IMG/VR virus record: IMGVR_UViG_3300042326_002445
Coordinates: 62,001-126,000 of that record
DNA length: 64,000 bases
Direction: 5' to 3' (one strand)
Made by a program: the position numbers and the translations under genes. Shown one piece after another: positions 19,901 through 42,544 of the stretch. Under the pieces are notes generated by a model, which saw only the letters and a program-made list of their open reading frames with translations, was not told the origin of the DNA and searched no databases. Each line of letters starts with the position of its first letter. Within the stretch, counting starts at the first letter, position 1.

Positions 19901-22881
19901 ACTCAATATCTTCTTGTCCTTTTAAGTGCCCATCTTGTGTTGAATCTACAGGCGGAAATGATGCATGCTCTGCAGCAAATTTTGAATGCACAGGATCTGA
20001 CAATACAACTTGCGTTACCATAATTGGTTTAGGAAATATATTATTGCCAAGTACTTCTAGTTCTTCGAGTTCAAGTAATTTTAATTCTTCTAGCAGTTCA
20101 TCAAATAATGTTTACGATCCTTATTCTGAATACTCTGATGGAAGTAATTTTGTAGAGCCATACAATCCAGATATCCCTCCTTTTGAGCTACCTCCTGCTG
20201 GCTCAAATGAATTAATAATAGAAGACATTCCATTTGAGACTCTATCAATTCCTGCTAGTTCAATTTTTTCAGGAGAAAATGCTTCATCTCTAAGAGAGGG
20301 AGATAGTCCAATAGTTCAATACTATTCTGATATTGATTGGATTCCAGAAATAAACACTGATTTATTTACTGGGTTAACTGCTTCTTATGATCTTAAAATG
20401 AAAGTCAGAAAAATTAAACAAAGTATTCCATTTGGCTCTTCTCCTATTTTTGATGGCATAAATGATGCGGCAAGATTAATAAAGTCAACTTTTGACTCAG
20501 ATCAAATAATAAAAAATATTCTCATTCTAAGTGACAATGATGAGAATACTAGTGGAATTTCTCCACTGCAAGTTATTGAAAATGTTAATGCTATTGACGG
20601 TTCAAGAAAAGTAAAAATAAATTCATTTAATATCAGTACTTTCTATCCAGTTACTGTTAGTGCTCAAGCTTCAAGGGCAAACATGTCTGGAGTTGGTGAA
20701 GTTGTGAAACAGACAGGTGGTTCTAATTTTGCCCTATTGTCATCTAGTTTACTTGATGAGGCTTCTGAATTTGCATTTACTGGCTCAGCTGGCTCAGCTG
20801 GTGCAGGCAAATTGTCTTTAACTCTTGATTTTGAAGAACAAATAATTATAAATTCTGTAAATCCAAATATAGAAATTGGAAAAGCAGATTTTATATCTTA
20901 TAAAATTGCTTATTCAAATGATGGTGAAAATTATACTTATATTCCAGAAGAATTTGACGCTGGTACCGCATGTCAGGTTAATGTAAAATCTAAATATTTA
21001 AAAATAGACTTTGAAGGCATAATAGATTTTGATAAGATAGATGAATATTTCTCAGCAGACCCATATGATCCATATAGTGAATCTATAAAAATTAGTAAAT
21101 ATGATTTATCAAAAATAAGAGGTATTAATTTAAATATTTCTGCAGCAGATGATAATTACATATATTTGGATAAAATCAGTCTATCATCCGCTCCACAACA
21201 AATTATTATATTTGTTAATTGGGAGGGTCCATCTGATTCTGAGATATCTGCTGGTGTTTCTACTTCTGATAGTGGTGACTGGAAAGATTACTCTCGTGAT
21301 GCTCAAAATGTAGCCATGGGTTCTGGCAAAGTAATTATACCAATAAGGTATAAAGATAAATTTAATGTTATACGTGAAGAGCTAGCTCAAATTAGTCCGT
21401 TTGTTTTTGAATTGCCTCACGGTTCTGTGCATAAAAATGCAGTGATTGCCATCTATAAAGACAATGGAGATTTACTAAATGAGTCAGAATATGCTGTAGA
21501 TAGAGATTTGGGTTTAATTAGAATGCAATATTCTATGTACGGAGAAAAGCTTTACGTTACTGTAGATGAAGAAAAAAGCTTAAAAATTGGAGTAAAAGCA
21601 TCTTTTGGTACAAAACCTGGTAATATATCTATAAGTAGTATAGGTTACATGCTAACAGTAAACGAAAATCTTACTCCAGTTAATGTCAATCAGCCACCAA
21701 TCGCCGTTAATGTGCGAATTAATCCACTGATAGTGTACCCGTACACTAATGTATATGTTTCTTATAGATATCTGGATCAAGATGGTGATGTTGAAGATGT
21801 AGATAAAAGAGTGATAAAATGGTATAAAAATGGCGTAGAGATTCCAGAGTTAATGAATATTTTATCATATAATGACTTGCATGATAGCGAGGATGTAACA
21901 TACTCATTCTATTATACTTCTAATTATGCAGAAATAGAAGCAATGTCTCCTGGGGTAACTGCAGAATTGCTTGCAAGTTTTGCTAATGAAAGAATATTTG
22001 AGCCAGGAGATCAGATTTATTTTACAGTTCAGGTGCATGATGGAGTGCAATTAAGTAACGCTTTCAGAAGTCCTACTGTAACGGTTTCAGATTATCCAGT
22101 TTCTCCATCTTCTATAACAATTAGATCTAGATACGCAAGTGCTGCAGATATTAAACTTACTACGGGAGGAGTTTTGGGGGGTGGAGGAAATGCTGCTGAT
22201 CCTGCTAATTTTGGTCAACTTGCTAATGAATTCACTAATAGAACAAGATTGTTTTTAGACTTTGATCTTTTTTCTCCAGCAGCATTTAATCTTGCGGTGG
22301 TCACGTGGTATGTGGTGGACAATGCTGGTAATATCATTACATTTAAATCAGGTAAAATATCGGATGTCCAATCTGGCATGTATTCAATAGGCCCATCTGA
22401 TATAAATATTTTTAATTTTGAAGCTGTTAAAATTGGACATCAGATTTATGCAGATTTGTTTATCCCAAGAAATGCAGCTCCTGGTATTTTAAATGACATA
22501 ACTATCAGAAGTAATACAGTAACAATCACCAATCTTGTTCCAAGAGCATCAAGCGTTGTATTGGAAAAAATAGTAGATGCTGGTACTGTTATATCTTATT
22601 GGAGATTTACTTACATGTTTGAAGATGAAGATGTTTATCAAAATGAGCCAGGACAATCGGATAACAGCACCATAAGGCTTTATAAGAAAACTCCAGCAGA
22701 AGATGTATTTACCTTAGAGACAAGAATTACAGATCCACTTAACTTCTTTATACCAAGTGATTATTACGATGAGGGTACGCAGATCTATTTAGAAGTAATA
22801 CCATTTGACAATGTTGCATATGGCGCTTCTGTAAAAAGTGAAATAGCGACTTGGACCAGGCCAAGTGGTCCTCCGCTGTAG
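10984..22881 (+). CDS. Giant (3965 aa) multidomain virion/adhesion protein: split vWA, FN3/Ig-like, LamG, Kelch propeller, PPC domain, Gly/Ser linkers
   Basis: FVLDHSGSM (12262-12288); YHMNEGSGSKVYDFSGNNLH LamG (~12790); Kelch repeats WRKIANMNLRRAMH...LYSIGG (~17400-18545); GVIGPVGDVDLFAF PPC (~19306); vWA second half GSSPIFDGI...ILILSDNDEN...TGG (~20430-20730). Confidence 0.65.
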   Translation: MINFSKCSLNGCSFKLLYDQQSSILEDQISYLAVNFFNSDSYWVPYKTNYPSLSDISMKLGKVSLDASVADTSEYSSGSISFSVDIKDEGDYVAAFKVSKENGISICSSLTISHSLLPGTNTTSYLFYPDRYGVFSEVPVNQDNKIFDFQHNMSQIGQDSVWITIEFSALVAGRYIFNMSVASNESFDFIDLDTSNFIVEGFTIFKKTHFDTSGLSLRNTASVNSSTFSSYRVNSLAESHPLSFNSFLNTIKQGEARIIGLFGLYEDSKFYSLEKSVSFKLSDFSENPRSVISIIPGGISADETLLNKLCVIFSEHYNNSLWHFSYSADSSGVSGKTFKLMGEDLGIQQKTISLDIFSSDNKYSSEDSGDNFTKNKVVIQPPVGVPLEISKITDNSISENLKDNFALLSDDRGEYYALNLPDRHQSFVLDHSGSMSWSDVSGERFGLINDIVDKFEQIYPGSVSYSLTTFKGTPVIVEWFGAIENNVEDSNDPDSVRTGFLQGKYTNFRGCHIVRKKGVAPSSPTDGEILFNGFDKVFYDTGLEESVDYYYSIYPLDSNNRLGSPSIIKAKTRSNEIVKGIKSLSGKELIGTGIRRDERSFFIYHMNEGSGSKVYDFSGNNLHLFIPSAARNSIIWLDESESPPVDADSNVGKGSGLRLTGRNSLCSWTGSLQSVFNGLNISFWCYLFQNIGTIEKNFISIRSGEKLFEIKLGSEKISVRLNGTTVGVLSFSFEVESWNHVSVNISEDWNTCTLYVNGVPVDSFLLGYYKELISLFYSNYINAIELGDISDNGFKGKISEVSCRKESVSSAEIEYESSFVPKDNGDRLLLLSWFTNLDNTGHRIVIKYKQESGPLRLLDEDIAGPANYGRYQGDSTFGNPPNTPPGRIIQSDLRARICYGDDIGPVSADDGISVFDSYVDGDVNECAFAYQFNSSITKKNRFSVDIPGFRNFFRIFRINENGEQSYPDDSGLLEYTPASYEDSSLPNNGVGAVENISVITGNRKIRLKWDVPQNSNIESVIIYYSDEPIEEDFLDRSDNYPQKYPVFAGIKEQNSFTHFYGRVRDSQRKSAAPGSFQSTLTAAIAESEDDLDNGKTAYYAIVSRDQYGRMSSPVFVNGTPNEENNDSGIPPENIIAHRAYGVDYNTISLRWINPVSASRFFDINGWLDDNVVLYFRVTDIYGRRIDEQGDFQIKFRFNDFLNGIVFTSISGGDDIKPASIVGLFDTENGSPVVENISFSELVSYNVSNLSNGWTRITVNTNNASLSDRNWADAVYTEVSMVFVRNNNVGQDPIFSFSTQPIRIYLKHPLKFDLIVNDAVFYSPQSYSISGPNASGPAICDYVYNGGNTDIGGESLVYGAYNGRSLPYTFAVNASYKNSPLPVGSTANIDIFEDSEPSFANTIDGPALLLRGGFSGIVGANPELGTPASQAGLSNEGLIVRNSYPFSTTISPISGQILFEDTPSGKESFGIGEIRVPGSRSFGRVFATVRVGLFYRTLGFYVAFIPTLYVKINASAPNPDGEDVATQYAYAYIVDPNKFRISMNENFNGNISIENFAKPVPDGTQVLWRLTKMRNAIDRPFYSTSQRSVSGNAVDKTIDGISQNVVFGPAANINSSIIEVDSGNVLLIPEEYVITATVSYGGATASASQAACIYPVTVNADQVLPAISQTSFYFAGKSFGKNVSYVQSVYADGEDFAVLEIIKDPRLLLGSDSDIRIEDIKAFCKCYNADGTNGGVENAYLTTLPTNQIIEIKANKLPDCQGSGLSSYIRGKIEILHGSSLNYYVGSNGKLLASSNEIGLDSTLTEVRESNRADIVVRANTFIPLKWKYYTKLEADPGPLTPVFCNFINSGFASSVYHNVTISASTSVIINGMEKSIFSDGGIASGNPPKMLKFIEPLYLQFAYILKNGQKVNGEVIEVDGNSVYEFIFAIKFAGLPVPDGTEVKFYKCGSNELVLNSNVGYTFTKEEIGPWSYGPNGELETSSISMVSMKISPISPVNPIFGSLFAEINYDKNGQVFRQRVAGIDFVYTGANSLAVTSSNLPNTGSGAVNTGNDPGNGQFGSGLPSGGGSAGGNGQSNNFGSIGGGTSGSPPGSNPATSLLPFPEIFAELENATSRLLINTAFSNECYIYDLLVSDASYKWRKIANMNLRRAMHVSEFVSGNLYSIGGLVGFTSSDTNADATVLVTDTCERWNPSENRWTTARKCLSKRFGCLSCADDRFIYLIGGFETKLKGSISPSGQAVQSRVPYVSRRFERYDTITNTWLSMAPMPVFDLNGNQLDIAAENTLTDRIGNDDVNFEQYGCALGKAFIKNNKIIIINGARKVDDKLNVEKYNDKIMVYDIGTNTWSVSANIPSSLASEFCRLYPIVWEENDSVHIYGGSSSIIENVNAEVGDEEFIIEKNRSFALQNSFGIPLEDIVYGAISIENIYRSDYLFGNLPKARDQVSFAHIYGEGVYLFGGRVFAQNESLGTNATRTAERISEVDEAYIVENLVKSPFGFSNTGCTNDGSRLIYITGGTTTNQSPGFVRLEIEAYGEQTEQINTERFSSIEPANATVRLDGFSGVDLKISAYDDEGDYVVGNLEVEISGLLAYGTGDDELEGGASIGGMQRAPTLNRRRKRKGTRVYPIVLNPYRVNLSNGIGYSRLEGRSEDVLKSLTEIQEILNADLSADQAVLGTASELQLRQGSVRFPYRISIVGRVIDDFYFGKTSYVSTEDQEVQQEVFLPENEVTDVIADAGDFGSATVMPPMLPAYASSSSPLPIADYGPVLTCSAIGVIGPVGDVDLFAFIPPKSGVYTITIEQRGFSQLLPMVSVFNESQFPYPINGTASNEIRFDNFGYSSDGRTANIELLKDVTYYFQISSYAGADSAEVNKVGAYRIRFTIPIAIIQNQGTSSSSSSSSGNNSSSSSSSNQNSGEVVSFNIFEYVTENTIANLSTPWSSVLRDFYNTYFRFLLANGGYNSQALQVAIDTVNSISSCPFKCPSCVESTGGNDACSAANFECTGSDNTTCVTIIGLGNILLPSTSSSSSSSNFNSSSSSSNNVYDPYSEYSDGSNFVEPYNPDIPPFELPPAGSNELIIEDIPFETLSIPASSIFSGENASSLREGDSPIVQYYSDIDWIPEINTDLFTGLTASYDLKMKVRKIKQSIPFGSSPIFDGINDAARLIKSTFDSDQIIKNILILSDNDENTSGISPLQVIENVNAIDGSRKVKINSFNISTFYPVTVSAQASRANMSGVGEVVKQTGGSNFALLSSSLLDEASEFAFTGSAGSAGAGKLSLTLDFEEQIIINSVNPNIEIGKADFISYKIAYSNDGENYTYIPEEFDAGTACQVNVKSKYLKIDFEGIIDFDKIDEYFSADPYDPYSESIKISKYDLSKIRGINLNISAADDNYIYLDKISLSSAPQQIIIFVNWEGPSDSEISAGVSTSDSGDWKDYSRDAQNVAMGSGKVIIPIRYKDKFNVIREELAQISPFVFELPHGSVHKNAVIAIYKDNGDLLNESEYAVDRDLGLIRMQYSMYGEKLYVTVDEEKSLKIGVKASFGTKPGNISISSIGYMLTVNENLTPVNVNQPPIAVNVRINPLIVYPYTNVYVSYRYLDQDGDVEDVDKRVIKWYKNGVEIPELMNILSYNDLHDSEDVTYSFYYTSNYAEIEAMSPGVTAELLASFANERIFEPGDQIYFTVQVHDGVQLSNAFRSPTVTVSDYPVSPSSITIRSRYASAADIKLTTGGVLGGGGNAADPANFGQLANEFTNRTRLFLDFDLFSPAAFNLAVVTWYVVDNAGNIITFKSGKISDVQSGMYSIGPSDINIFNFEAVKIGHQIYADLFIPRNAAPGILNDITIRSNTVTITNLVPRASSVVLEKIVDAGTVISYWRFTYMFEDEDVYQNEPGQSDNSTIRLYKKTPAEDVFTLETRITDPLNFFIPSDYYDEGTQIYLEVIPFDNVAYGASVKSEIATWTRPSGPPL
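17086..17280 (+). repeat. Gly/Asn/Ser-rich flexible linker
   Basis: GSGAVNTGNDPGNGQFGSGLPSGGGSAGGNGQSNNFGSIGGGTSGSPPGS. Confidence 0.8.
19663..19716 (+). repeat. Poly-Ser tract
   Basis: SSSSSSSSGNNSSSSSSS. Confidence 0.9.
20050..20103 (+). repeat. Poly-Ser tract
   Basis: STSSSSSSSNFNSSSSSS. Confidence 0.9.
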
Positions 22882-32109: not shown

Positions 32110-33564
32110 ATGCAAGCAGATACAGAAAATCCACATGTAAAGTTGTTATTTCTTTTGATACAATCAAAAGAAAATGTTGAAGAAGTTCTTGCTACTGTTC
32201 AAGAGCCAAGTAATCTATTTGTTGAGCCATCTCACCAAGCTCTTCTTAAGGCATGCATTTGGGCAAGAGACAAGAATAAAAATTTGACTTCCGAGCAATT
32301 GGAGCATTTCTGTAGATTTAATCTTAACTATACTCCTCAAAAGACTGCAGTATTAGTAGCAGAATATTCTGCTATTGAAATGATAGAGGGCACTAAGAAG
32401 GAAGATTTGAATGTTTTGGTGAGTGAATGTCAAAATCTTTATTATTATAGATTTTTAAAATTTGAATTAGACAAGATTAAGACAGACAGGTCTCCAGATT
32501 TCTTTAAGAAATTAAATACGTTACATGACAGTATTGGAAAATGCTTATCTACTGGAGCTAGTAATTCTTTTAGTTTTCATGATACAGTTGAAAACTTTTC
32601 CTCATTCGTAGAAGATCTGCATGTTAAGGCCAATCACCCTGAAAAAAGAATTGTATGTGGCATCAAGGAAATTGATGACTGCATGACTGTAGGATTTAGG
32701 CCTGGCACGCTGACCCTTACTGTTGCTGACGTTGGTGGAGGTAAGTCCACCATGATGCTTAACATAGCTTACAATTTATGGAAAAGAAATTGTAACGTGC
32801 TATTCCTTCCGCTAGAAATGCCATGGGAAGAAATATTTAAAAAGTTTTTATCAAGAGAAACTTTAATTGAATTTGAAAAGTTTGCTAGACCAGAATTGAT
32901 GACGGAAAAAGACTGGGAAATTTTACGAAAAAGATCTGATGAACTTGCTTCAATGAGGCAAAAGCTTGTGTGGGCTGATGTAAAAAGTAGACCAACAGTT
33001 CAGGAAATAAAAAGAGCTATTGAAAGCAAAATGCATTACTTTAAGCCAGATGTGGTTGTTATTGATTATATTGCGAATATAAAACCTGATGGCAAGGTAG
33101 ATAATTGGCTTGCAATTGGAGACATCTTAAAAGAACTAAGAGCATTTGGAAAACAGTATGGATTTGCGATATTGAGTGCTGCCCAAATGACAAGAGATGG
33201 TATTAAGAAGCTTAAAACGGATAAAGATCAGTCTAAGAGTCCTGGCAGCGAAGACCTGCGTGGTAGTCATGAATATTCTGCAGATGCAGACAACATATTT
33301 GCGCAGTCTCCGTCTCCTGATGAGCCAAATAGAAAGATGCTTTTATGGTGTATCAAAGCTCGTTATGGAAAAAAGACTTTTGATGGTAAAAATTATGCTA
33401 TTTTAGATTTCTATCCAGAATACAGCAAGATAGACAGCTCTACTGCTTATTCTTTTGATGTTAACGATGAAGAGTTTAAAAAGCAGCTTGATGCTATGTC
33501 TGGATTCGCTAAGCCACAGCAATCTGAGCAGGCTACAGAAGATGACTATGGGTGGATGACTTAA
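32110..33564 (+). CDS. dnaB: Replicative DNA helicase DnaB family
   Basis: GFRPGTLTLTVADVGGGKST, LPLEM, VVIDY, SAAQMTR, SHEYSADAD, KARYG. Confidence 0.9.
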   Translation: MQADTENPHVKLLFLLIQSKENVEEVLATVQEPSNLFVEPSHQALLKACIWARDKNKNLTSEQLEHFCRFNLNYTPQKTAVLVAEYSAIEMIEGTKKEDLNVLVSECQNLYYYRFLKFELDKIKTDRSPDFFKKLNTLHDSIGKCLSTGASNSFSFHDTVENFSSFVEDLHVKANHPEKRIVCGIKEIDDCMTVGFRPGTLTLTVADVGGGKSTMMLNIAYNLWKRNCNVLFLPLEMPWEEIFKKFLSRETLIEFEKFARPELMTEKDWEILRKRSDELASMRQKLVWADVKSRPTVQEIKRAIESKMHYFKPDVVVIDYIANIKPDGKVDNWLAIGDILKELRAFGKQYGFAILSAAQMTRDGIKKLKTDKDQSKSPGSEDLRGSHEYSADADNIFAQSPSPDEPNRKMLLWCIKARYGKKTFDGKNYAILDFYPEYSKIDSSTAYSFDVNDEEFKKQLDAMSGFAKPQQSEQATEDDYGWMT

Positions 33565-34091
33565 TGAAAGAGTATATTGACAAGCTAAAGCGCAAAGTCA
33601 GGATCGCAGATGTCTTAAGAGAAAGAGGTATCAATCCATCTAGATCTCATGGCGGTAAATTAGTTTATAAGTGTCCGTTGCATAAGGGGGATAATTCTCC
33701 AAGTTTTTATGTGTATGAAAAAGATACTGGAGATGATTATTTTTGCTATGGCTGTAAAGCTGGCGGTAATGTAGTTCATTTAGTAAAATCTCTTAATAAT
33801 TGTAGTGGTTCTGAGGCTGTTAAGTCTTTAGGTGAGATAGCTGGCATAGAAGTTGATCCGTATTTTTATCAATATGATCTTGATGTTTATATTGAAAGTC
33901 CATCATACGCCAGTGTTGATATAGATGAGTTGTTATGCAAGTCTACCTTGTCTTTTAGGAAACTAAGACAAATGAATGCAATAAAGCACATTGACAGCAT
34001 TGATGTCAAGTGGAAAAAAATTGACATTGCTTATTGGGCTAACGATGTACAATCAATGAAAGAAAATCATTCATGGATCAATGGAAAATAA
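33564..34091 (+). CDS. Stand-alone primase zinc-binding domain (CHC2) protein; start ATG 33564 (TAATG overlap with dnaB)
   Basis: IADVL...CPLHKGDNSPSF...YFCYGCKAGGNVVHLV...EAVKSL. Confidence 0.85.
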   Translation: MKEYIDKLKRKVRIADVLRERGINPSRSHGGKLVYKCPLHKGDNSPSFYVYEKDTGDDYFCYGCKAGGNVVHLVKSLNNCSGSEAVKSLGEIAGIEVDPYFYQYDLDVYIESPSYASVDIDELLCKSTLSFRKLRQMNAIKHIDSIDVKWKKIDIAYWANDVQSMKENHSWINGK

Positions 34092-35013: not shown

Positions 35014-35262
35014 ATGGAATATAAATGCAGATTTGAAAGACTTGACAAAATAAAAACAGAAGACTTAAAGAAAATTAGTCTTTGCACTGATTGTCATAGC
35101 TTTGATTGTAGCAACCCAATACAAAATGTTACTATTAGTGTTTTTGGCATTAATAAAACAGTGCGAGCTTATGTAACTCCAAACAATATATATGGAGTTC
35201 AGGATTGTGAAGGTTTTAGCTGTCGTTCTCTTACGGAGGAAGAAGATGAGTCTGAAGATTAA
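35014..35262 (+). CDS. Small Cys-rich hypothetical protein
   Basis: CTDCHSFDC...DCEGFSC. Confidence 0.55.
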   Translation: MEYKCRFERLDKIKTEDLKKISLCTDCHSFDCSNPIQNVTISVFGINKTVRAYVTPNNIYGVQDCEGFSCRSLTEEEDESED

Positions 35263-36544
35263 TAATAGTAATTTTGTTCATTTACACAATCATTCTGAAT
35301 TTAGTGCATTCGATGGTTTGAATAAAATGTCAGAGTTTCCCAGACTTGCTAGAAAAATGGGATTTAAGTCTCTTGGAATAACTGATCACGGTAATGTCGG
35401 CGGTTTAATTAAGTTTTTTCAAGAATGCACTAAGTCAGTTGACAAGAATGGTGTAAAAATAGAATATGATCCGATCAAGCCTATTTTAGGTTGTGAATTT
35501 TATCTTGCAAAAGATAGATTTGCAAAGAGTAAAAAAGATCAACCTGATGGAAGAAAAGGAAACAGGCACATTGTTTTGATAGCAAAAAATTGGCAAGGCT
35601 TTCAGAATTTATGCACGCTTTCAGAAAAAAGCTGGACAGAGGGTTTTTATAATGACCCAAGAATTGATTTTGATTTATTAACTAAGCACCATGAAGGACT
35701 TATATGCAGCACTGCATGTTTAAGTTCTGTGGTAAATAATAATTTGCTGCATGGCAGATATGATCAGGCTAAAAAAGTTGCAACTATATTAAAAAATATA
35801 TTTGGAGAAGATTTTTATTTTGAGGTGATGTATCACGGATTAGATGCTGAAAGGTACATTATCCCAGATATTTTTAAACTTTCAGATTCACTAGGATGCA
35901 AAGTATTAGCAACCAATGATGTTCACTATTCTCACAAAGAAGATGGTGCAAGTCATGAAGTACTCATGTGCATGAGTACTTCAAGATGCATACATGATCC
36001 AAAAAGATTAAAGTTTCCTTATCATGAGTTTTATCTAAAAAGCGCTGAGGAAATGGCTCAGATTTTTAAAAATCGTTTAGATTCCTTATACAATACTCTT
36101 GAGGTCGCTGATAAGATAGATCATAAGGATATATCAAAAAACTTCGGAGGTATGAGACTGCCAAAGTTCCCATTACCAAATGATTTTTCTGATCCTCATG
36201 ACTATTTGGAATATTTAGCTTGGGACGGACTAAAGCAGTTGCACTTAGATCATTCTCAAAAGCATATCGACAGATTAAGACTTGAGCTTGAAGATGTAAA
36301 GATTGCTAAAATGAACAACAATTATGACTTTGCAACTTATTTTTTAATTGTTCGTGACTATATACAATATGCAAATAATAAGGGCATACTTACAGGATGT
36401 GGCAGAGGTTCTGGATTTGGTAGCCTTTTACTAAAGACTCTAGGCATTACATATGGAGTTGACCCAATAGAACATGATTTGTTGTGGGAGCGCTTCTTAG
36501 GCTTTGACACAAAGCGTTTTGTAAAGGAGCAAGACTTTGTCTAA
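35246..36544 (+). CDS. dnaE: DNA polymerase III alpha, N-terminal piece (PHP domain plus start of palm); start ATG 35246
   Basis: FVHLHNHSEFSAFDG, ITDHG, GCEFY, RHIVL, STACL, ATNDVHY, GRGSGFGS, WERFL; SD GGAGGA at 35235. Confidence 0.92.
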   Translation: MSLKINNSNFVHLHNHSEFSAFDGLNKMSEFPRLARKMGFKSLGITDHGNVGGLIKFFQECTKSVDKNGVKIEYDPIKPILGCEFYLAKDRFAKSKKDQPDGRKGNRHIVLIAKNWQGFQNLCTLSEKSWTEGFYNDPRIDFDLLTKHHEGLICSTACLSSVVNNNLLHGRYDQAKKVATILKNIFGEDFYFEVMYHGLDAERYIIPDIFKLSDSLGCKVLATNDVHYSHKEDGASHEVLMCMSTSRCIHDPKRLKFPYHEFYLKSAEEMAQIFKNRLDSLYNTLEVADKIDHKDISKNFGGMRLPKFPLPNDFSDPHDYLEYLAWDGLKQLHLDHSQKHIDRLRLELEDVKIAKMNNNYDFATYFLIVRDYIQYANNKGILTGCGRGSGFGSLLLKTLGITYGVDPIEHDLLWERFLGFDTKRFVKEQDFV

Positions 36545-38489
36545 TCTAGAAGAAATAAAAAATAAACTTTCTAATTCTTCTAGGTATGCTCAATTGAATA
36601 GTATTGGCAAACAAAGATGTATAGATGAAATAGAATCAATGAACTTTTCTCCTGGGCTATCTGGAGATACTGTGTTAGAAGAGTTCTTTGCCCTTGTTAA
36701 AAAACTGGAAGGCAAAAATGGTTCTAAAAATTCCATAAATAGTTTTGTTGCCTATTGCTTTGAAATGACATCAAAGCTTCCTGACATAAAAGATGAATTC
36801 TTGCCGTCTCGACGCATTTTTGCTAGAGCTGGATTTCCTGATATTGACGCAGATTTTGACTATGAAAGACGACATGAGGTATATGAATATCTGATTGAAA
36901 AGTACGGGAGAGATAGAGTCGGGAATATTGGGACTTATGGCACATTAAAAATGAAAAGCTATATTACCAGAGTTGTTAAGGCTCTTGATCTAACAAATAG
37001 TTTTCATTTAGGTAAGGAAAGTTATGTCAAAAACAACAACATGTTAGTTCGTGAGATCATAGATTCTTTGCCTGAGCAAAAAGGTGCATTTTTAAAGGTT
37101 AGAGATGACGAAGGTGAAGATCATGTTATAAAAAATCTTTCTGACGCCATGGCTCACTGCGATTCTTTTTCTCAATATATGAAAAAGTATTCCCAGATAT
37201 CTGAACATTCAAAAAGGATAGAAGGTTTGGCTTCAAGTTACGGGGTTCACGCTGCAGGAATTGTGATATCTGGAGAGCCCTTGGCTCAAGTCGCTCCATT
37301 AAGAGCCACAAGTAAGTCTGATGAAAATTCTGGAGCGGAATATGCCACGCAATTTGCTTATGAAGATCTTGAATATCTAGGGCTTATTAAATTTGACATA
37401 TTGGCTCTTAGTACGTTGAGTGTAATATCTGAAACTGTAAAAACTATAAAAGAACGTCTTAACATTGATATTGATGTTCAAAAATTACCGCTCGATGATG
37501 AAAAATCATTTGAGCTTTACAGGAGCGGTAATTTGACAGGTGTCTTTCAATGTGAAGAAAAAGGTATGCAAAAGACCATGATGCAAATGGGGGTGGACAG
37601 ATTTGAAGACATTTGCGCAGGCATAGCTCTATTTAGACCTGGACCAATGGCTAGTATTCCAAAATATTGTGCTAGAAAAAATGGGACAGAGCAAATAGAC
37701 TATTATCATGAGTCTATTGTCAAATATGTTGAAAAAATTTTAAAACCCACATATGGCATTCTTGTATATCAAGAACAGGTTATGCAGATTTGTAACAGCC
37801 TTGCTGGGATGACCGTAAGCGATGGATATCAAGTTATTAAAGCTGTAGGCAAGAAAAAAGAAGATCAATTAAATAAATACAAATCTATCTTTGTTGATGG
37901 ATGTTGCATTAATGGAGTTGATAAATCCCTGGCTTCTAGATATTGGAATGAATTTATTATGCCATTTGCAGCGTATGGATTCAATAAATCACATTCTTAT
38001 TGCTATGGTCTTTTAAGTTATCAAACTGCATATTTAAAAGCTAATTTTCCATCAGAGTTTATGCTGAGCTATCTAAACGTTGAATGTTTACAAAAGAAAT
38101 GGGATCGTGTAGATTTGCTTATTGATGAAACTAAGAGAATGGGTATTTCAATAGGGTTAAAAAATCTTAATGTTTGCAAGCTTAAATTTGTGATGAACGA
38201 AGATCGCGTTGGAAATAGGGTAAAATATTACATTACACCATCTTTATTGTGCAAAGGTTTAAAAATGAGCGCAGCTGAAGAGATACAAGAAAAGCAGCCA
38301 TTTAAAAGTTATGAAGATTTTGTTCAAAAAGTTGACACTAGCGTTGTGGATACCGAAGCTATTACTGCATTGCAAGACGCTGGATTCTTCCCAAAAACAA
38401 AAGACCCAGTAGAGAAATTTGTAAAACTTAGAGATCATATACGAGCAACACGAAAAAAAGGCATGAGCGGTGTCGATATATTTCAATAA
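36537..38489 (+). CDS. dnaE: DNA polymerase III alpha, C-terminal piece (catalytic palm, thumb, fingers; no OB/CTD)
   Basis: FPDIDADF (36837), GVHAAG, TQF, GLIKFDILAL (Asp 37395), GVFQCE, ALFRPGP, GILVYQEQVM, YGFNKSHS; TTG start with SD AAGGAG 7 nt upstream. Confidence 0.92.
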   Translation: MSNLEEIKNKLSNSSRYAQLNSIGKQRCIDEIESMNFSPGLSGDTVLEEFFALVKKLEGKNGSKNSINSFVAYCFEMTSKLPDIKDEFLPSRRIFARAGFPDIDADFDYERRHEVYEYLIEKYGRDRVGNIGTYGTLKMKSYITRVVKALDLTNSFHLGKESYVKNNNMLVREIIDSLPEQKGAFLKVRDDEGEDHVIKNLSDAMAHCDSFSQYMKKYSQISEHSKRIEGLASSYGVHAAGIVISGEPLAQVAPLRATSKSDENSGAEYATQFAYEDLEYLGLIKFDILALSTLSVISETVKTIKERLNIDIDVQKLPLDDEKSFELYRSGNLTGVFQCEEKGMQKTMMQMGVDRFEDICAGIALFRPGPMASIPKYCARKNGTEQIDYYHESIVKYVEKILKPTYGILVYQEQVMQICNSLAGMTVSDGYQVIKAVGKKKEDQLNKYKSIFVDGCCINGVDKSLASRYWNEFIMPFAAYGFNKSHSYCYGLLSYQTAYLKANFPSEFMLSYLNVECLQKKWDRVDLLIDETKRMGISIGLKNLNVCKLKFVMNEDRVGNRVKYYITPSLLCKGLKMSAAEEIQEKQPFKSYEDFVQKVDTSVVDTEAITALQDAGFFPKTKDPVEKFVKLRDHIRATRKKGMSGVDIFQ

Positions 38490-38492
38490 GCT

Positions 38493-38789
38493 ATGAATAT
38501 AGAAATACGAAAATCAATATCTAGAAAAATAAATACTGGACAATATGAAAATATTGTAATTACTTGTGAGTTACAAGGTAACTCTGTTGTTGAAAATGAT
38601 GCAGACTTATATAAATTACAAAAAGAGATAACAGATAAGCTAATTAAAGATTATGTTATTACAGAGAATGCAGTTCTTGAAGAGCTTGAGTTACAAGAAA
38701 AAAAAGCTTTTATGGAGTCGCCAAGCACTGCTGATAATAAAGTAAAATTGTCTTTAACTCCAGAGCAGGAAAGTGAGTTGTTTGGATGA
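38493..38789 (+). CDS. Hypothetical phage protein
   Basis: RKINTGQYENIVI resembles a motif recurrent in small phage proteins (recalled, not searched). Confidence 0.55.
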   Translation: MNIEIRKSISRKINTGQYENIVITCELQGNSVVENDADLYKLQKEITDKLIKDYVITENAVLEELELQEKKAFMESPSTADNKVKLSLTPEQESELFG

Positions 38790-39913
38790 TTGACAAAAAC
38801 GATCTCGATGATATATTTGGAATACCTCAAGATGGAAGTCATCTTGATGATGATAGTGGTAGCACAGATGATGTAGCCTTTGGTGGAGTTGTTTCTCAAA
38901 ACAGTAATAAAACTTTTTTTGATCAAGTAAATGTTTTGATTAATGATACAAATTCTATAGCTAAATCTGAAGATGAAATTATAAAGGATTCTAAAATTAA
39001 AAAAGATAAAAAAGAATCAGGAGGCGATGGCGATGAGCTTCAAATTAAAAAAAATAATCAATCAGCACAAACGCATAGTGAAGATACTACTTCCCTCAAC
39101 AGCAAAGCCGATCATAAAGTTCTTGCCGAATCCGATGAACTTCTGGGAGATAAACTTCATACCAGAGAAGGACTTCATAGACCTGAGATGGATAACGCCG
39201 TCAAGAGCAATGCAGTTGAAGCGCAAGTAATAATAAAACTAAGCGAGTGGAATGTTAATTCAAAAGACTTGTCATTTGCATCATTTTATGAAATGAAAAA
39301 AGATGCTTTGTCAAGCTGGCTATTGCCTGGTGGTGAAATTAATTTTATACATACACACGATGAACTGGTGAATGCAAAAGTTGATTTAAGTACAATAGAA
39401 TTTGGTGATTTACACGCCATGTTTGATGCATTAAAAGGTGTTCAGCACTGGAAGGACAGAGTAGTTGAAATCAGTTTAAGAGTTAATGCTCAATATTATT
39501 CGTGGAAAAGAGCTATAGATCTTTTCCGTGGCACTCTTGCAAGAATGCATTATGAAAAGCCAGCGGAAAAACAGGATGGCGTAGTTATGGAACACATGGG
39601 AGATATGATAAGATATTTCTCTCAACTTGAATCTTTGCATGCAAATGTAGATGCAATTGTTAGAAATTTGGATAATGCTTTCGATTGTATATCAAGACAA
39701 ATAACTGTTTCATTGCCACAAATTACAAAAGATACTGATAGTTTAGAAAAAAGAGCTTCTAAAAGTATTCACAATGCCAGTGCAACACATGATGGTTTTG
39801 CCGATATAATGCAATCAGCAGATCGTTTGCCGTTGAGCAAAAGTTCTGCTTTTAAAAACAATAACGCCTCTTCTTCAAAGAAGATAGGCACAGTCGAATG
39901 GAATGAGATCTAA
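38786..39913 (+). CDS. Hypothetical protein, acidic disordered N-terminus plus helical C-terminus (possible recombination mediator)
   Basis: Lies immediately before SSB and RecA; helical segment ending DCISRQIT. Confidence 0.4.
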   Translation: MIDKNDLDDIFGIPQDGSHLDDDSGSTDDVAFGGVVSQNSNKTFFDQVNVLINDTNSIAKSEDEIIKDSKIKKDKKESGGDGDELQIKKNNQSAQTHSEDTTSLNSKADHKVLAESDELLGDKLHTREGLHRPEMDNAVKSNAVEAQVIIKLSEWNVNSKDLSFASFYEMKKDALSSWLLPGGEINFIHTHDELVNAKVDLSTIEFGDLHAMFDALKGVQHWKDRVVEISLRVNAQYYSWKRAIDLFRGTLARMHYEKPAEKQDGVVMEHMGDMIRYFSQLESLHANVDAIVRNLDNAFDCISRQITVSLPQITKDTDSLEKRASKSIHNASATHDGFADIMQSADRLPLSKSSAFKNNNASSSKKIGTVEWNEI

Positions 39914-39933
39914 TTTTTAGAAAGAGGTAACAA

Positions 39934-40581
39934 ATGGGACTAGTTGATTGGACATCGTTTGGTAAGGGAGAAAAGTCAGGTAATGGAGCAAAGTACCTGA
40001 AGCTTGAGGCTGGCAAGTCTTATCGCATACGGCCTGTATTCAAGCCACACATTTTCTATAAGTATTTTGTTGAAAGACCTCAGGGAGGTTTTGGCCAGGC
40101 TATTACCGATACTCCAGATTCTTGTGTAATCAGAAAGAAGTATGGAGAGCAGGCAAAGCAGCGTTTTGCAGTTAATGTGATTGACAGAGCAGACGGCATT
40201 ATTAAGGTCCTTGAGGGCCCTATTAGTATCCTGAAGCAGTTTTCCACATGGGCTAGTGAGACTGGCACAGATCCTGGCAGCAAGGATGGTGGTGAATTTG
40301 CGATTAGAGTTGAATGCCCAGGGAATGATAAGAAGAAGACTAGGTATGTGGTCAGCTTTATTAACTATGCGCCATTTACAGATGAGGAAAAAGCTCTTAT
40401 CAAGTCTGGAGCTATGAATGATCTTGAGAACTTGTATAAGGCCACTCCTCAAGAGCAGATTGAGGCTAAGGTTTATGGATCTGAAGAAGATTCTGGCTCA
40501 TCATCTCAAAAGGGCAAAAAGGCTCCAGAGAAGCAGGGTGCTTCTTCGAAGTCGCAACTTTCTGACGATCTTGACTTTTAA
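39934..40581 (+). CDS. Single-stranded DNA-binding protein, gp32-like
   Basis: YLKLEAGKSYRIRPV, FAVNVIDRADGIIKVLE, DPGSKDGGEFAIRVE, TRYVV, acidic tail SDDLDF; SD GAGGT. Confidence 0.75.
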   Translation: MGLVDWTSFGKGEKSGNGAKYLKLEAGKSYRIRPVFKPHIFYKYFVERPQGGFGQAITDTPDSCVIRKKYGEQAKQRFAVNVIDRADGIIKVLEGPISILKQFSTWASETGTDPGSKDGGEFAIRVECPGNDKKKTRYVVSFINYAPFTDEEKALIKSGAMNDLENLYKATPQEQIEAKVYGSEEDSGSSSQKGKKAPEKQGASSKSQLSDDLDF

Positions 40582-40601: not shown

Positions 40602-41786
40602 ATGAAGAAATCATCGGTTGGTATTGATAATTTGAAAGGCTTTCAGCTTGGAGCAAATGTTGAGGTAAAAGACCTTATCCCAACTGGTCATGCAGAGTTG
40701 GACCACACTATTGCTGCAGGTCTGATGGAGGATGGAGAAAAGTTCACTACAGGTGGTCTTCCTCTTGGTAAGTTATGCCTTTTTTATGGAAATGAAGGAA
40801 GCGGAAAGAGTAGCTTAGCTTATCGCGTTGTTGGATCTGCTCAACGTATGGGGTATAACTGCGCGTGGGTTGATACAGAACATTCTTTTAGCGATCAGCT
40901 TGCTGAAGTAAATGGTGTTGATAAGAAAAAGCTTTTTTATAGTAACCTCATTAACCTTGAAGATCCAGATAAAATTTCTACAGCAGAAAATGTAATGGAT
41001 ATGGTTATTAGCGCATGTGCTAGCAAGAAGATTAACGTCATTGTGCTAGACTCCGTAGCTAATTTGATTCCAGAGCGTGTTATGGATAATGACGCAGATA
41101 AAGATACCGTGGCAGAATTAGCTAGAGTTCTTAGTAAGACACTTGGAAAAATGCTGAGTTTTGCTGCTTCTAACAATGTATTGGTCATTTTTATCAATCA
41201 GTTAAGAGAAAAAATTGGAGTAATGTTTGGCAGTCCAGATACTATGCCAGGAGGAAGAGCTCTCAAACATGCCTCTAGCTTAATACTGAAGGTTACTAAG
41301 CTTGAGTCAAAAGCTCATAACATCATGATGCAAAATGAAGATGGCACAGAGCGTTTGATAGGAAGATATTCTAGCGTCATGATTGAAAAAAATAGATTTG
41401 CAAAACCAAATCAGGGATCTATCCCAGTTGCAATTTATTATGAACCATATTTTCCAGATGTTTCTGACGTTGCATTTGATGCAGGCAGAAATACAAAAGT
41501 GATCAAAGTTAGAAATGGTACTTTTGCATGGAGAGATATCAAGGCGGACGGAAGAAAGGCTTTTATAGATCTCATTAAAGATGCAGATGTTCTTGAAAAG
41601 TTAGTAGAAGAAATTAGAGAGCAGGCCGAAGAGCAGTCTATTGTTTTGCCAATAGAATTGGTAAAGTTTGATAAGGAAAAGTATATTGAGACTATCAAAA
41701 ATACTAAGCCTGCAGGCCAAAGCTCAGATTCTCAGACAGTTAGTGCTAAGAAAAAGAAAGAAGTCCCTGAAGAGGCAGAAGCCTGA
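40602..41786 (+). CDS. recA: RecA recombinase
   Basis: GGLPLGK...YGNEGSGKS, VDTEH, VIVLDSVANL, FINQLREKIGVMFGSPDTMPGGRALKH, KNRF. Confidence 0.95.
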   Translation: MKKSSVGIDNLKGFQLGANVEVKDLIPTGHAELDHTIAAGLMEDGEKFTTGGLPLGKLCLFYGNEGSGKSSLAYRVVGSAQRMGYNCAWVDTEHSFSDQLAEVNGVDKKKLFYSNLINLEDPDKISTAENVMDMVISACASKKINVIVLDSVANLIPERVMDNDADKDTVAELARVLSKTLGKMLSFAASNNVLVIFINQLREKIGVMFGSPDTMPGGRALKHASSLILKVTKLESKAHNIMMQNEDGTERLIGRYSSVMIEKNRFAKPNQGSIPVAIYYEPYFPDVSDVAFDAGRNTKVIKVRNGTFAWRDIKADGRKAFIDLIKDADVLEKLVEEIREQAEEQSIVLPIELVKFDKEKYIETIKNTKPAGQSSDSQTVSAKKKKEVPEEAEA

Positions 41787-42544
41787 TGGAATCAGATCAG
41801 TTCTCAATGCTTGAGAGAGAGCAAATCATAGCTCTTTCTCAAGCATCTTTATATGAGAATAGCAATGACGCTGCTGAGGCAAGAAGTTATTTATTTGAAA
41901 CTAGAAAAATATGTGAAGAAACAGTAAGAGATTTTTATTTAGGATATGTTCCAGTAAGGGTAAACGACAGAAAAATAAGTGGTCGTATTATTTTTCCCAT
42001 TTGGGATTGTCACGGAGAAACCGTTGCTCTTTCAACAAGAGATTTTAGATCTTCTATTAAAAACAGAGGGCATTGGCATGAATCTTTTAATAAAAAACAT
42101 CATTTGTATGGCTGGAAAATGGCAGAGTCTTTTATTAAAGATACTGGTCAGGTTATAGTGGTAGAGGGTCAGTTTGATGTTCTTGCTATGCATTCTCATG
42201 GATTCAAAAATACGGTAGGAATTCTTGGCAGTCATTTGTCAGTATTTCATATTATGTTATTGATAAGATATGCAGATGAGATTGTATTTGCATTTGATAA
42301 CGATGAGGCTGGCAAAAAAGCTTATCAAGAAAGTTACAAAATAATAGCATCAAATGGATTATTGTACGATAAAACATTGAGTTTCTTTAAGGTTGATCTG
42401 GGCGTTCACAAGGATCCAGACGAATTATTAAAGAGTTCAGGAAGAGACGACATGGAAATGCACATAGAAGCATCAAGAAAGGTGAAGAAAAAATATGACG
42501 CAGCACAATGGTCAGCAAATGTATCTGATCTCTCAATTGATTGA
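41786..42544 (+). CDS. dnaG: DnaG-type primase catalytic (TOPRIM) core lacking the zinc-binding domain
   Basis: ARSYL, LGYVP, GRIIFPI, HLYG, VVEGQFDV, FDNDEAG, KDPDE; no CHC2 motif at the N-terminus. Confidence 0.9.
   Translation: MESDQFSMLEREQIIALSQASLYENSNDAAEARSYLFETRKICEETVRDFYLGYVPVRVNDRKISGRIIFPIWDCHGETVALSTRDFRSSIKNRGHWHESFNKKHHLYGWKMAESFIKDTGQVIVVEGQFDVLAMHSHGFKNTVGILGSHLSVFHIMLLIRYADEIVFAFDNDEAGKKAYQESYKIIASNGLLYDKTLSFFKVDLGVHKDPDELLKSSGRDDMEMHIEASRKVKKKYDAAQWSANVSDLSID

What the first reader, a model, noticed from the sequence alone, without database searches (positions are those of the whole stretch)
35246..38489. Intein-less two-piece DnaE split through the palm, with a degenerate duplicated junction segment
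Seen: piece 1 (PHP with all nine metal-ligand positions apparently intact, GRGS, ERFL) stops at 36544. Piece 2 starts at TTG 36537 with its own SD (AAGGAG, 7 nt) and carries PDIDAD and KFD. There are no intein motifs. The first ~95 aa of piece 2 echo the end of piece 1: RCIDEIE~RLRLELE, EEFFALVK~TYFLIVR, NSFVAYCFEMTSKLP~GSLLLKTLGITYGVDP (canonical GSLVAYxLGIT). Known: in E. coli DnaE the G363-S364 motif and R390 bind the triphosphate while D401/D403/D555 bind metal, and natural cyanobacterial split DnaE relies on an intein. Inference: duplication-then-fission gave a heterodimer whose active site is shared between chains and whose proofreading PHP is a separate subunit. A +1 frameshift at TTT-GTC is a less likely alternative.
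Basis: partly seen in the sequence, partly recalled or inferred. Interest (0 to 1): 0.75.

Follow-up and report, generated by a model that had tools for sequence, protein, structure and literature searches.

The report
Two-gene DnaE polymerase of huge phages
A giant lake-water phage encodes its replicative DNA polymerase (DnaE) as two separate genes cut through the catalytic palm, with no intein or frameshift, and the second gene keeps a decayed but conserved copy of the segment that the first gene supplies; the layout is shared by a whole clade of 350-500 kb phages.

Summary
Piece 1 (35246..36544) carries a PHP exonuclease domain with all nine metal ligands, plus the dNTP-binding half of the palm (GRGS, ERFL). 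Piece 2 (36537..38489; TTG start, AAGGAG 7 nt upstream) carries the catalytic aspartates, fingers and HhH domain.

It is not an assembly error. Contigs from four independent lake metagenomes cross the junction with no differences.

It is not a frameshift. In relatives the two genes overlap (+1 frame), lie 3-14 nt apart in other frames, or are separated by 0.6-3 kb of ordinary genes. This includes complete 461 and 499 kb phage genomes.

No intein features are present.

The "echo" is real but only visible through profiles. Piece 2's first ~93 residues match the canonical DnaE N-palm segment (hhalign probability 92%, E 7e-7). The triphosphate-binding residues are replaced there, and the segment is still under purifying selection.

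Best reading: an obligate two-subunit Pol III alpha whose active site is built from both chains, probably made by translational coupling. This is inferred, not assayed.

Closest precedent: the "minimal" split Pol III alpha of other jumbo phages (Iyer et al. 2021). I rate it a new variant of a known kind, of moderate interest.

The parts
35246..36544 (+). Piece 1 gene (432 aa from ATG 35246; GGAGG at 35235-35239). Contains the PHP exonuclease domain and the N-terminal, dNTP-binding half of the palm.
   Evidence: Homologues of 430-432 aa start at the same Met. An upstream in-frame ATG at 35192 is less likely.
35285..35926 (+). PHP domain, from first to last metal ligand. Nine ligands in 432-aa numbering: H14 H16 D23 H48 E84 H108 C158 D225 H227.
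   Evidence: Pfam PF02811 E 9e-44. All nine are invariant in 31 homologues and identical to Taq Pol III alpha in a phmmer alignment. The nine-ligand trinuclear centre is defined in PMC5636811.
36203..36511 (+). Functional N-palm segment of piece 1. GRGS at 36401-36412; the R of ERFL at 36491-36493.
   Evidence: PF07733 positions 2-98. Aligns to E. coli alpha 272-393, including G363 S364 R390. GRGS and W-ERFL are invariant in 31 homologues.
36524..36544 (+). Junction: SD-like AAGGAG 36524-36529, TTG start 36537-36539, piece-1 stop TAA 36542-36544. The two genes overlap by 8 nt, with piece 2 in the +1 frame.
   Evidence: The same 8- or 11-nt overlap, with a TTG or ATG start, occurs in four relatives of 57-78% identity and shows no common slippery site.
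36537..38489 (+). Piece 2 gene (650 aa): pseudo-N-palm, catalytic C-palm, thumb, fingers, HhH.
   Evidence: AF2 model pLDDT 86. VIA Z 25-28 to E. coli, Mtb and Taq Pol III alpha over residues 93-650.
36537..36815 (+). Pseudo-N-palm (aa 1-93). It is a degenerate copy of the canonical segment: RLxxEL helix, YFLIV helix, GRGS strand, GSLVAY helix, ERFLNPxR. GRGS is replaced by G-S-K-N and the R of ERFL is lost.
   Evidence: hhalign probability 91.9%, E 6.9e-7. HMM versus shuffles. phmmer to Taq 426 onward. Streptomyces-phage DnaE align from aa 29. Conserved E31 N65 N68 S69 A72 T78 P82. dN/dS about 0.2-0.4. pLDDT 80-92, helical, in the model of piece 2 alone.
36837..36857 (+). PDIDADF strand, carrying the two catalytic aspartates (E. 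coli D401/D403 equivalents).
   Evidence: Invariant P101 D102 D104 D106 F107 in 85 homologues. Aligned to the Taq PDIDTDF.
37389..37397 (+). K-F-D containing the third catalytic aspartate (D287; E. coli D555 equivalent).
   Evidence: K285 and D287 are invariant. Aligned to Taq LKMDFLGL.
37413..37907 (+). Fingers domain.
   Evidence: PF17657 E 2.6e-50.
38250..38399 (+). Helix-hairpin-helix (duplex-binding) domain.
   Evidence: PF14579, 27.1 bits against a cut-off of 25.6.
38469..38486 (+). C-terminal G-V-D-I-F-Q, a possible clamp-binding motif. The protein ends here, with no OB or tau-binding domain.
   Evidence: G642 and F649 are nearly invariant in 85 homologues. The link to the E. coli QADMF motif is from my own knowledge and was not tested.

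Best explanation
The two genes encode two subunits of one C-family replicative polymerase. Piece 1 supplies the zinc-dependent PHP 3'-5' exonuclease and the dNTP-triphosphate-binding half of the palm (GS motif, Arg of ERFL). Piece 2 supplies the three metal-binding aspartates, thumb, fingers, duplex-binding HhH and probably the clamp contact. In the window, piece 2 is translated from its own TTG start, which overlaps the piece-1 stop, so translational coupling would give roughly equimolar subunits. The subunits then associate non-covalently so that one palm and one active site are built from both chains. Piece 2 begins with a decayed copy of the N-palm segment. This copy has lost the catalytic residues but stays conserved. 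I infer that it acts as a structural adaptor, either covering the open face of the half-palm or helping dock piece 1. The overlap is the footprint expected if the split arose by duplication followed by complementary loss. Shown: the anatomy, the homology of the pseudo-copy, conservation, independence of the two cistrons, and reproducibility of the sequence. Inferred: physical association, joint activity, coupling, and the role of the pseudo-copy.
For: Separate cistrons across the clade. The genes overlap by 8-11 nt (+1 frame) in the window and four relatives. They share a frame with one stop codon and 12 nt between them in L084. Three nt separate stop and start in L007. Gaps of 11-14 nt occur in 487-502 kb Tara contigs. 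In L003-L006 and L010-L012, 0.6-3 kb of Dam methylase, ClpP, SAM-methylase and unknown genes separate them. Complete 461 and 499 kb genomes with terminal repeats have one piece 1 each. Complementary invariant residues: GRGS and ERFL occur only in piece 1; the Asp triad occurs only in piece 2. Natural fusion is tolerated: P0098 reads straight through the junction and its AF2 model is a normal Pol III alpha (pLDDT 88, pTM 0.81, TM 0.72 to Mtb DnaE1). In that model piece 1's copy sits in the canonical palm with high confidence. Pseudo-copy homology and constraint. No PolA or PolB was found in the 224 kb of this genome that is held. The sequence is reproducible across runs.
Against: There is no direct evidence that the chains bind each other or that both are needed. 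No multimer prediction could be run. In the model of piece 2 alone, the pseudo-N-palm is confidently folded (pLDDT 80-92). Piece 2 could therefore have a self-contained, non-canonical palm. The structural aligner did not place that module on the canonical N-palm (alignments start at residues 93-101), so its position is unknown. The genome is only about 55% complete, so another polymerase may exist. In several relatives the genes are kilobases apart, so tight coupling is not a general requirement.
Confidence: 0.75

Rival explanations
1. Piece 2 is a self-sufficient polymerase that uses its own diverged N-palm. Piece 1 is a free-standing PHP exonuclease or accessory whose N-palm segment is only a docking remnant.
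For: Piece 2 carries a complete-looking palm. Its N-terminal module is conserved and confidently folded when modelled alone. The genes can lie kilobases apart.
Against: The pseudo-copy lacks the GS motif and the ERFL arginine. From published Pol III alpha structures (my knowledge), these bind the incoming triphosphate. In piece 1 those residues are invariant across 31 homologues down to 57% identity, which a mere docking remnant would not require. The pseudo-copy evolves about 3-5 times faster at non-synonymous sites than the rest of piece 2. The insertion-less fused relatives L008 and L009 keep only the piece-1-type copy.
Confidence: 0.12
2. A programmed +1 ribosomal frameshift near GAC-TTT-GTC-TAA fuses the two frames into one about-1080-aa DnaE that contains an internal insertion.
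For: The +1 relation and the DF-codon context are conserved in the window's subclade. An SD-like element lies upstream. A natural fused homologue exists (P0098).
Against: Any shift would have to occur within 36525-36544. There is no shared slippery motif: L087 has a different sequence and an ATG start. The SD spacing of 7 nt suits initiation. Other relatives have the pieces in frame with a stop, in the third frame relation, or separated by up to 3 kb of other genes.
Confidence: 0.03
3. The two products are ligated by protein trans-splicing through a cryptic or atypical split intein formed by the piece-1 tail and the piece-2 N-terminus.
For: Split-intein DnaE genes exist in cyanobacteria and in 'fractured' metagenomic loci (PMC2677866). 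Inteins occur elsewhere in this family. A conserved N-S dipeptide lies at residues 68-69.
Against: No HINT or intein family hit at the junction. The region is all-helical in both models, whereas HINT is a beta fold. The window's piece 1 has at most one residue beyond the conserved body (ends DF-V). Splicing at N68/S69 would give a product with two GS-helix segments. The region is homologous to the palm instead.
Confidence: 0.02
4. The split is an assembly or sequencing error, or a decaying pseudogene.
For: The window comes from a single metagenome-assembled contig. Only contigs, not raw reads, could be laid on it.
Against: The identical junction appears in contigs of four independent runs at depths of 5-20, and at least 19 runs hold it. 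Both halves are conserved across thousands of clusters, with catalytic residues invariant.
Confidence: 0.01

Closest known systems
Minimal split DNA polymerase III alpha of group 2.2 jumbo phages (Iyer, Anantharaman, Krishnan, Burroughs, Aravind 2021, PMC7824862)
   Same: A phage C-family polymerase palm divided, without an intein, into an N-terminal NTP-binding protein and a C-terminal Mg2+/template-binding protein. The two are encoded by separate genes and are proposed to reconstitute one enzyme.
   Different: That version is described as a minimal core with no other Pol III domains. It accompanies a family B polymerase, and its genes are distant. Here the enzyme is full-size (active-looking PHP, fingers, HhH). 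No PolB was found in the part of the genome held. The genes are usually adjacent. Piece 2 retains a decayed copy of the N-palm. No direct sequence comparison with their proteins was made.
Cyanobacterial split DnaE and metagenomic 'fractured' dnaE genes (PMC2677866)
   Same: dnaE is encoded in two genes whose products must cooperate.
   Different: Those carry split inteins that ligate the halves, at other positions, and the fractured loci hold a free-standing homing endonuclease. Here there is no HINT motif and no endonuclease, and the break lies between the GS-motif subdomain and the DxD strand.
Intein-less two-subunit family B polymerases: Methanothermobacter PolB1/PolB2, and gp43A/gp43B of Aeh1-type T4-like phages
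   Same: A replicative polymerase catalytic chain is naturally split into two genes, with both products needed.
   Different: They belong to a different polymerase family and fold. No retained duplicated segment is known to me.
Mycobacterium tuberculosis DnaE1 and Thermus aquaticus Pol III alpha (7PU7, 2HPI)
   Same: Overall fold, nine-ligand PHP exonuclease site, GS motif, Asp triad, fingers.
   Different: They are single chains of about 1180-1220 aa with OB and tau-binding C-terminal domains. The phage enzyme is two chains and stops after the HhH domain.
Gene fission by duplication and complementary degeneration (general model, e.g. Drosophila monkey-king; my own knowledge)
   Same: Two daughter genes keep complementary parts of a parent and share a retained overlap.
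   Different: Here the overlap is inside an active-site domain, and one copy has become a conserved pseudo-module.

Membership tests
C-family DNA polymerase, DnaE type (Pol III alpha) | N-terminal PHP domain; in proofreading-proficient members, nine metal ligands | tested here: met
   PF02811 E 9e-44. The nine ligands are invariant and identical to Taq. Exonuclease activity itself was not assayed.
C-family DNA polymerase, DnaE type (Pol III alpha) | Pol-beta-like palm: GS motif and Arg for the triphosphate, plus three catalytic carboxylates | tested here: met
   GRGS and ERFL in piece 1 align to E. coli 361-364 and 389-392. D102, D104 and D287 in piece 2 are invariant and aligned to Taq. The residues are spread over two chains.
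C-family DNA polymerase, DnaE type (Pol III alpha) | Fingers and HhH duplex-binding domains; overall fold | tested here: met
   PF17657 E 3e-50 and PF14579 27.1 bits. Piece 2 model Z 25-28 to 2HNH, 7PU7 and 2HPI. Fused relative TM 0.72 to 7PU7.
C-family DNA polymerase, DnaE type (Pol III alpha) | Catalytic subunit is one polypeptide | tested here: not met
   Two ORFs in different frames. Separate genes throughout the clade.
C-family DNA polymerase, DnaE type (Pol III alpha) | C-terminal OB fold and tau-binding domain (DnaE1) | tested here: not met
   Piece 2 ends about 30 aa after the HhH domain, and no further Pfam hit is found. Structural alignments stop near E. coli residue 911-927.
Split-intein dnaE (cyanobacterial or 'fractured gene' type) | HINT splicing motifs at the ends of the two halves | tested here: not met
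   No intein or HINT family in either piece, although the same search finds inteins in relatives. The junction regions are helical or disordered. Piece 1 has no tail.
Split-intein dnaE (cyanobacterial or 'fractured gene' type) | Free-standing homing endonuclease between the halves (fractured genes) | tested here: not met
   The ORFs overlap in the window. Intervening genes in relatives are Dam methylase, ClpP, SAM-methylase and unknowns.
Programmed +1 frameshift gene | Conserved slippery site and a fixed frame relation among relatives | tested here: not met
   All three frame relations, intergenic spacers and intervening genes occur. There is no shared slip motif.
Minimal split Pol III alpha of jumbo phages (Iyer et al. 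2021) | Split between the NTP-binding and the Mg2+/template-binding subdomains of the palm | tested here: met
   The break lies between ERFL and PDIDxDF. This matches the boundary as described in PMC7824862.
Minimal split Pol III alpha of jumbo phages (Iyer et al. 2021) | Minimal architecture without PHP or other Pol III domains, alongside a family B polymerase | tested here: not met
   PHP, fingers and HhH are present. No PF00136 match in the 224 kb held, but the genome is about 55% complete.
Minimal split Pol III alpha of jumbo phages (Iyer et al. 2021) | Direct sequence relationship to the published proteins | not tested
   Their accessions were not retrieved. No cultured phage in INPHARED is more than 35% identical to piece 2.

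The most novel reading that the evidence does not exclude
The conserved pseudo-N-palm is a built-in placeholder. In free piece 2 it occupies or shields the site of the missing dNTP-binding subdomain, keeping the half-enzyme soluble and inactive. The genuine N-palm of piece 1 displaces it on assembly. Polymerase activity would then be switched on only when the proofreading subunit is present. This would be a natural example of overlapping-fragment complementation inside a replicase active site, and a clear molecular fossil of fission by duplication and complementary decay.
Probability: 0.2. Interest if true: 0.75.

Novelty: new variant of a known kind. Interest (0 to 1): 0.55.

Why it matters
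A replicase active site shared between two chains is a natural test of how far the C-family palm can be taken apart. It also offers a handle for studying coupling between proofreading and synthesis, because the exonuclease chain carries the dNTP-binding residues. The retained pseudo-copy is a rare legible record of how a gene fission happened. On the practical side, annotation pipelines call both halves 'DNA polymerase III alpha' or 'PHP domain protein', and may flag them as frameshifted or fragmentary. Knowing that the split is real and clade-wide avoids false 'repair', and gives a marker for this group of uncultured 350-500 kb freshwater and marine phages.

Tried and rejected
- Pairwise BLASTP of the piece-1 C-terminus against the piece-2 N-terminus found nothing.
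- hhalign of whole-family profiles A2 versus A1 found no junction hit. The echo cannot be shown against piece 1 itself, only against canonical DnaE.
- blastn of the locus against phage records gave no match.
- The search for related loci with the single protein gave nothing. It worked only with an alignment.
- Structure: VIA alignment of the piece-2 model starts at residues 93-101, so it did not show where the pseudo-N-palm sits. In the fused model that segment has only pLDDT 50-75. No third structure job was available to fold the module alone, and no multimer tool exists.
- Polarity of events: the ML tree nests the insertion-less fused L008 and L009 inside the split clade (87/88 and 95/75 support). 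The AU test does not reject them as sister (p 0.41). It does reject excluding P0098 as well (p 0.013). I therefore call only P0098 a secondary fusion.
- dN/dS: synonymous sites are near saturation, so the ratios are rough.
- Homing-endonuclease origin of the split: no endonuclease was found in any intervening region.
- Literature: five searches found no description of this full-length split.
Full report
**Context.** The window is bases 62001-126000 of a 223.6 kb IMG/VR virus record. CheckV rates it about 55% complete, so the phage is roughly 400 kb. All large ORFs are on the + strand and GC is about 0.34. The finding sits in a replication module:
- DnaB-type helicase (32110..33564)
- a primase zinc-ribbon protein (33552..34091)
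- the two DnaE pieces
- three unassigned ORFs
- a RecA/UvsX-like recombinase (40602..41786)
- a Toprim primase core (41786..42544)

**The observation.** Piece 1 most likely starts at ATG 35246, with GGAGG six nt upstream. Close homologues of 430-432 aa start at the same Met. It stops at TAA 36542-44. Piece 2 starts at TTG 36537, seven nt after AAGGAG, in the +1 frame. That frame is closed by TAA at 36522-24, so any frame change would have to occur within 20 nt.

Pfam results:
- Piece 1: PHP (E 9e-44) and PF07733 profile positions 2-98.
- Piece 2: PF07733 positions 69-260, the finger domain (E 3e-50) and HHH_6.
- No intein family hit in either piece.

The nine PHP metal-ligand positions are invariant in 31 homologues. 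They are identical to those of Taq Pol III alpha in a phmmer alignment. The nine-ligand trinuclear zinc site is the one defined for Mtb DnaE1 (PMC5636811). GRGS and ERFL of piece 1 align to E. coli alpha 361-364 and 389-392. PDIDADF and KFD of piece 2 align to the catalytic aspartate positions and are invariant in 85 homologues.

**Not an artefact.** At least 19 lake-water metagenome runs from different samples and studies hold the junction region. Contigs from four of them cross it with no substitutions, indels or joints, at word depths of 5-20. These are assembler contigs, not raw reads. They show reproducibility but cannot exclude rare variants.

**A clade-wide two-gene arrangement.**
- Piece-2-like proteins of about 650 aa are abundant, at 47-88% identity, on contigs up to 505 kb.
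- Stand-alone piece-1-like proteins of 430-480 aa number 2887 clusters at E <= 1e-10.
- The window and four relatives of 57-78% identity overlap by 8 or 11 nt with piece 2 in the +1 frame. Four use a TTG start and one uses ATG. They share no slippery motif.
- In L084 the genes are in the same frame, separated by one TAA and 12 nt.
- In L007, 3 nt separate stop and start.
- In two Tara contigs of 487 and 502 kb the gaps are 11 and 14 nt, in the third frame relation (coordinates).
- In L003, L004, L005, L006, L010, L011 and L012, 0.6 to about 3 kb lies between the pieces. These stretches hold one to seven ORFs, including a D12 Dam methylase, a ClpP protease and a SAM methylase. None is a homing endonuclease.
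- Two of these records are complete genomes with direct terminal repeats (461 and 499 kb). Each has a single piece 1.

This variety excludes a programmed frameshift as the general mechanism. It shows that each piece is an independent cistron. The stop/start overlap in the window's subclade is the usual signature of translational coupling (inference).

**The duplicated segment.** Direct comparison of the piece-1 C-terminus with the piece-2 N-terminus is not significant. I then took everything upstream of PDIDxDF in 30 piece-2 proteins. I compared it with the equivalent segment (GRGS-65 to PDID-1) of 64 ordinary single-chain phage DnaE proteins from L013-L082. The PDID motif and everything after it were excluded from both sides.
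- hhalign gives probability 91.9%, E 6.9e-7, over 91 colinear columns covering both profiles end to end.
- The canonical-segment HMM scores individual piece-2 N-termini up to 17.4 bits. The maximum over 600 shuffles is 5.1 and the 99th percentile is 2.5. The window's own sequence reaches 3.8 bits over residues 66-92.
- phmmer on the window's own sequence aligns piece 2 from residue 65 to Taq 426 onward, while piece 1 aligns through Taq 455.
- tblastn alignments of Streptomyces-phage DnaE reach back to residue 29 of piece 2.

In the copy, GRGS has become G-x-K-N (N65 invariant), the GS of GSLVAY has become N-S, and ERFL has become (D/E)-F-L without the arginine.

The copy is not decaying freely:
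- E31, N65, N68, S69, A72, T78 and P82 are invariant or nearly so.
- Non-synonymous to synonymous ratios are about 0.2-0.4 for codons 25-91. They are about 0.7-1 for codons 1-24 and about 0.08 for the rest, though synonymous sites are close to saturation.
- A profile of the module finds 71 cluster representatives among 1.84 billion (37 at E <= 1e-10). In nearly all, the module is at the protein's N-terminus. Four full-length proteins carry it internally.

**Fused relatives.** P0098 (1106 aa) reads through the junction. It has the end of piece 1, a 12-residue linker, then a complete piece 2 including the pseudo-copy. It is sister to the split P0089 with full support, so it is a secondary fusion.

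Its AF2 model (pLDDT 88, pTM 0.81) is a normal Pol III alpha, with TM 0.72 to Mtb DnaE1:
- Piece 1's GS-motif segment is modelled with pLDDT 86-92.
- The linker is disordered.
- The pseudo-copy forms four helices at pLDDT 50-75.

L008 and L009 are about 1000-aa relatives with no pseudo-copy (ERFL, about 12 residues, then RVFARPGFPDID). The ML tree nests them inside the split clade, but the AU test allows them to be its sister. They are therefore either the pre-duplication state or re-fusions that discarded the pseudo-copy. In both cases the pseudo-copy goes with the split state, apart from rare secondary fusions.

**Piece 2 alone.** The AF2 model (pLDDT 86) predicts the first 90 residues confidently (80-92). 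The pattern is helix, helix, short strand, helix, the same order as the canonical N-palm. A disordered linker follows at residues 93-100. Rigid alignment to solved Pol III alpha structures (Z 25-28) begins at residues 93-101, so the position of the module relative to the body is not established.

**Mechanism.** From published Pol III alpha and PolC structures (my knowledge), the GS motif and the ERFL arginine hold the incoming triphosphate, and the three aspartates hold the metals. Here the former are invariant only in piece 1 and the latter only in piece 2. The simplest reading is an obligate heterodimer with a composite active site. The proofreading PHP domain is on the same chain as the dNTP-binding half. 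I put this at 0.75. The main rival is that piece 2 works alone with a non-canonical N-palm (0.12). Frameshifting, trans-splicing and artefact together get about 0.06.

**Comparison with what is known.** The nearest description is the 'minimal' Pol III alpha of group 2.2 jumbo phages. It is split into NTP-binding and Mg2+/template-binding proteins (PMC7824862). The boundary is the same. That enzyme lacks PHP and other domains and accompanies a PolB. No PolA or PolB was found in the 224 kb held here. Split-intein dnaE genes (PMC2677866) differ in mechanism and position. No cultured phage in INPHARED is more than 35% identical. Five literature searches found no account of this full-length split or of its retained pseudo-segment. 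Absence from the searched library does not prove it is unpublished.

**Verdict.** It is a new variant of a known kind (an intein-less split polymerase). Its distinctive point is the conserved decayed copy of the active-site half. Interest is 0.55.

Noticed in passing
window 33552..34091 and 41786..42544: The DnaG-type primase is also encoded in two genes 7.7 kb apart. One is a zinc-ribbon-only protein (PF01807). The other is a DNAG_N plus Toprim protein just after the recombinase gene. Relatives L084 and L085 show the same layout. Gene fission seems to be a theme of this replisome.
   Followed up: partly
window 38469..38486: Piece 2 ends in G-V-D-I-F-Q. The G and F are nearly invariant in 85 homologues. 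It looks like a clamp-binding peptide at the extreme C-terminus. No beta-clamp domain (PF02768) was found in the 224 kb held.
   Followed up: partly
L003, L005-L007, L010-L012 and P0154-P0234 (relatives of piece 1): More distant piece-1 proteins carry a 25-45 aa acidic tail ending in a conserved D-x-G-G-V-D-R-Y. The window's subclade lacks it and stops right after D-F. The tail's function is unknown; it may be a docking peptide.
   Followed up: no
L007:268-2862; P0092, P0099, P0119, P0034, P0038; L009 around 4158-5791: Genuine inteins (HINT plus LAGLIDADG) interrupt the PHP domain of one relative's piece 1 and the fingers/GFNKS region of several relatives' piece 2. The fused L009 gene is interrupted by about 1.6 kb near residue 483. 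Bacillus phage KLEB27-3 has a DnaE split by an HNH endonuclease.
   Followed up: partly
window 1734..9497 and 10984..22881: Two giant ORFs (2587 and 3965 aa) have no PHROG match.
   Followed up: no
window 36501..36515: A 6-bp hairpin followed by a T-rich tract lies just upstream of the piece-2 Shine-Dalgarno, inside piece-1 codons F-D-T-K-R-F. It could modulate coupling or be a by-product of the codons. The scan found 4 such sites against 1.8 expected.
   Followed up: no
window 38493..40581: The three ORFs between piece 2 and the recombinase (98, 375 and 215 aa) keep their order and size in all close relatives (L083-L088) but have no Pfam hit. The 215-aa protein has only a weak hit to a PHROG family of unknown function (phrog_8542). 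They are candidates for further replisome subunits.
   Followed up: no
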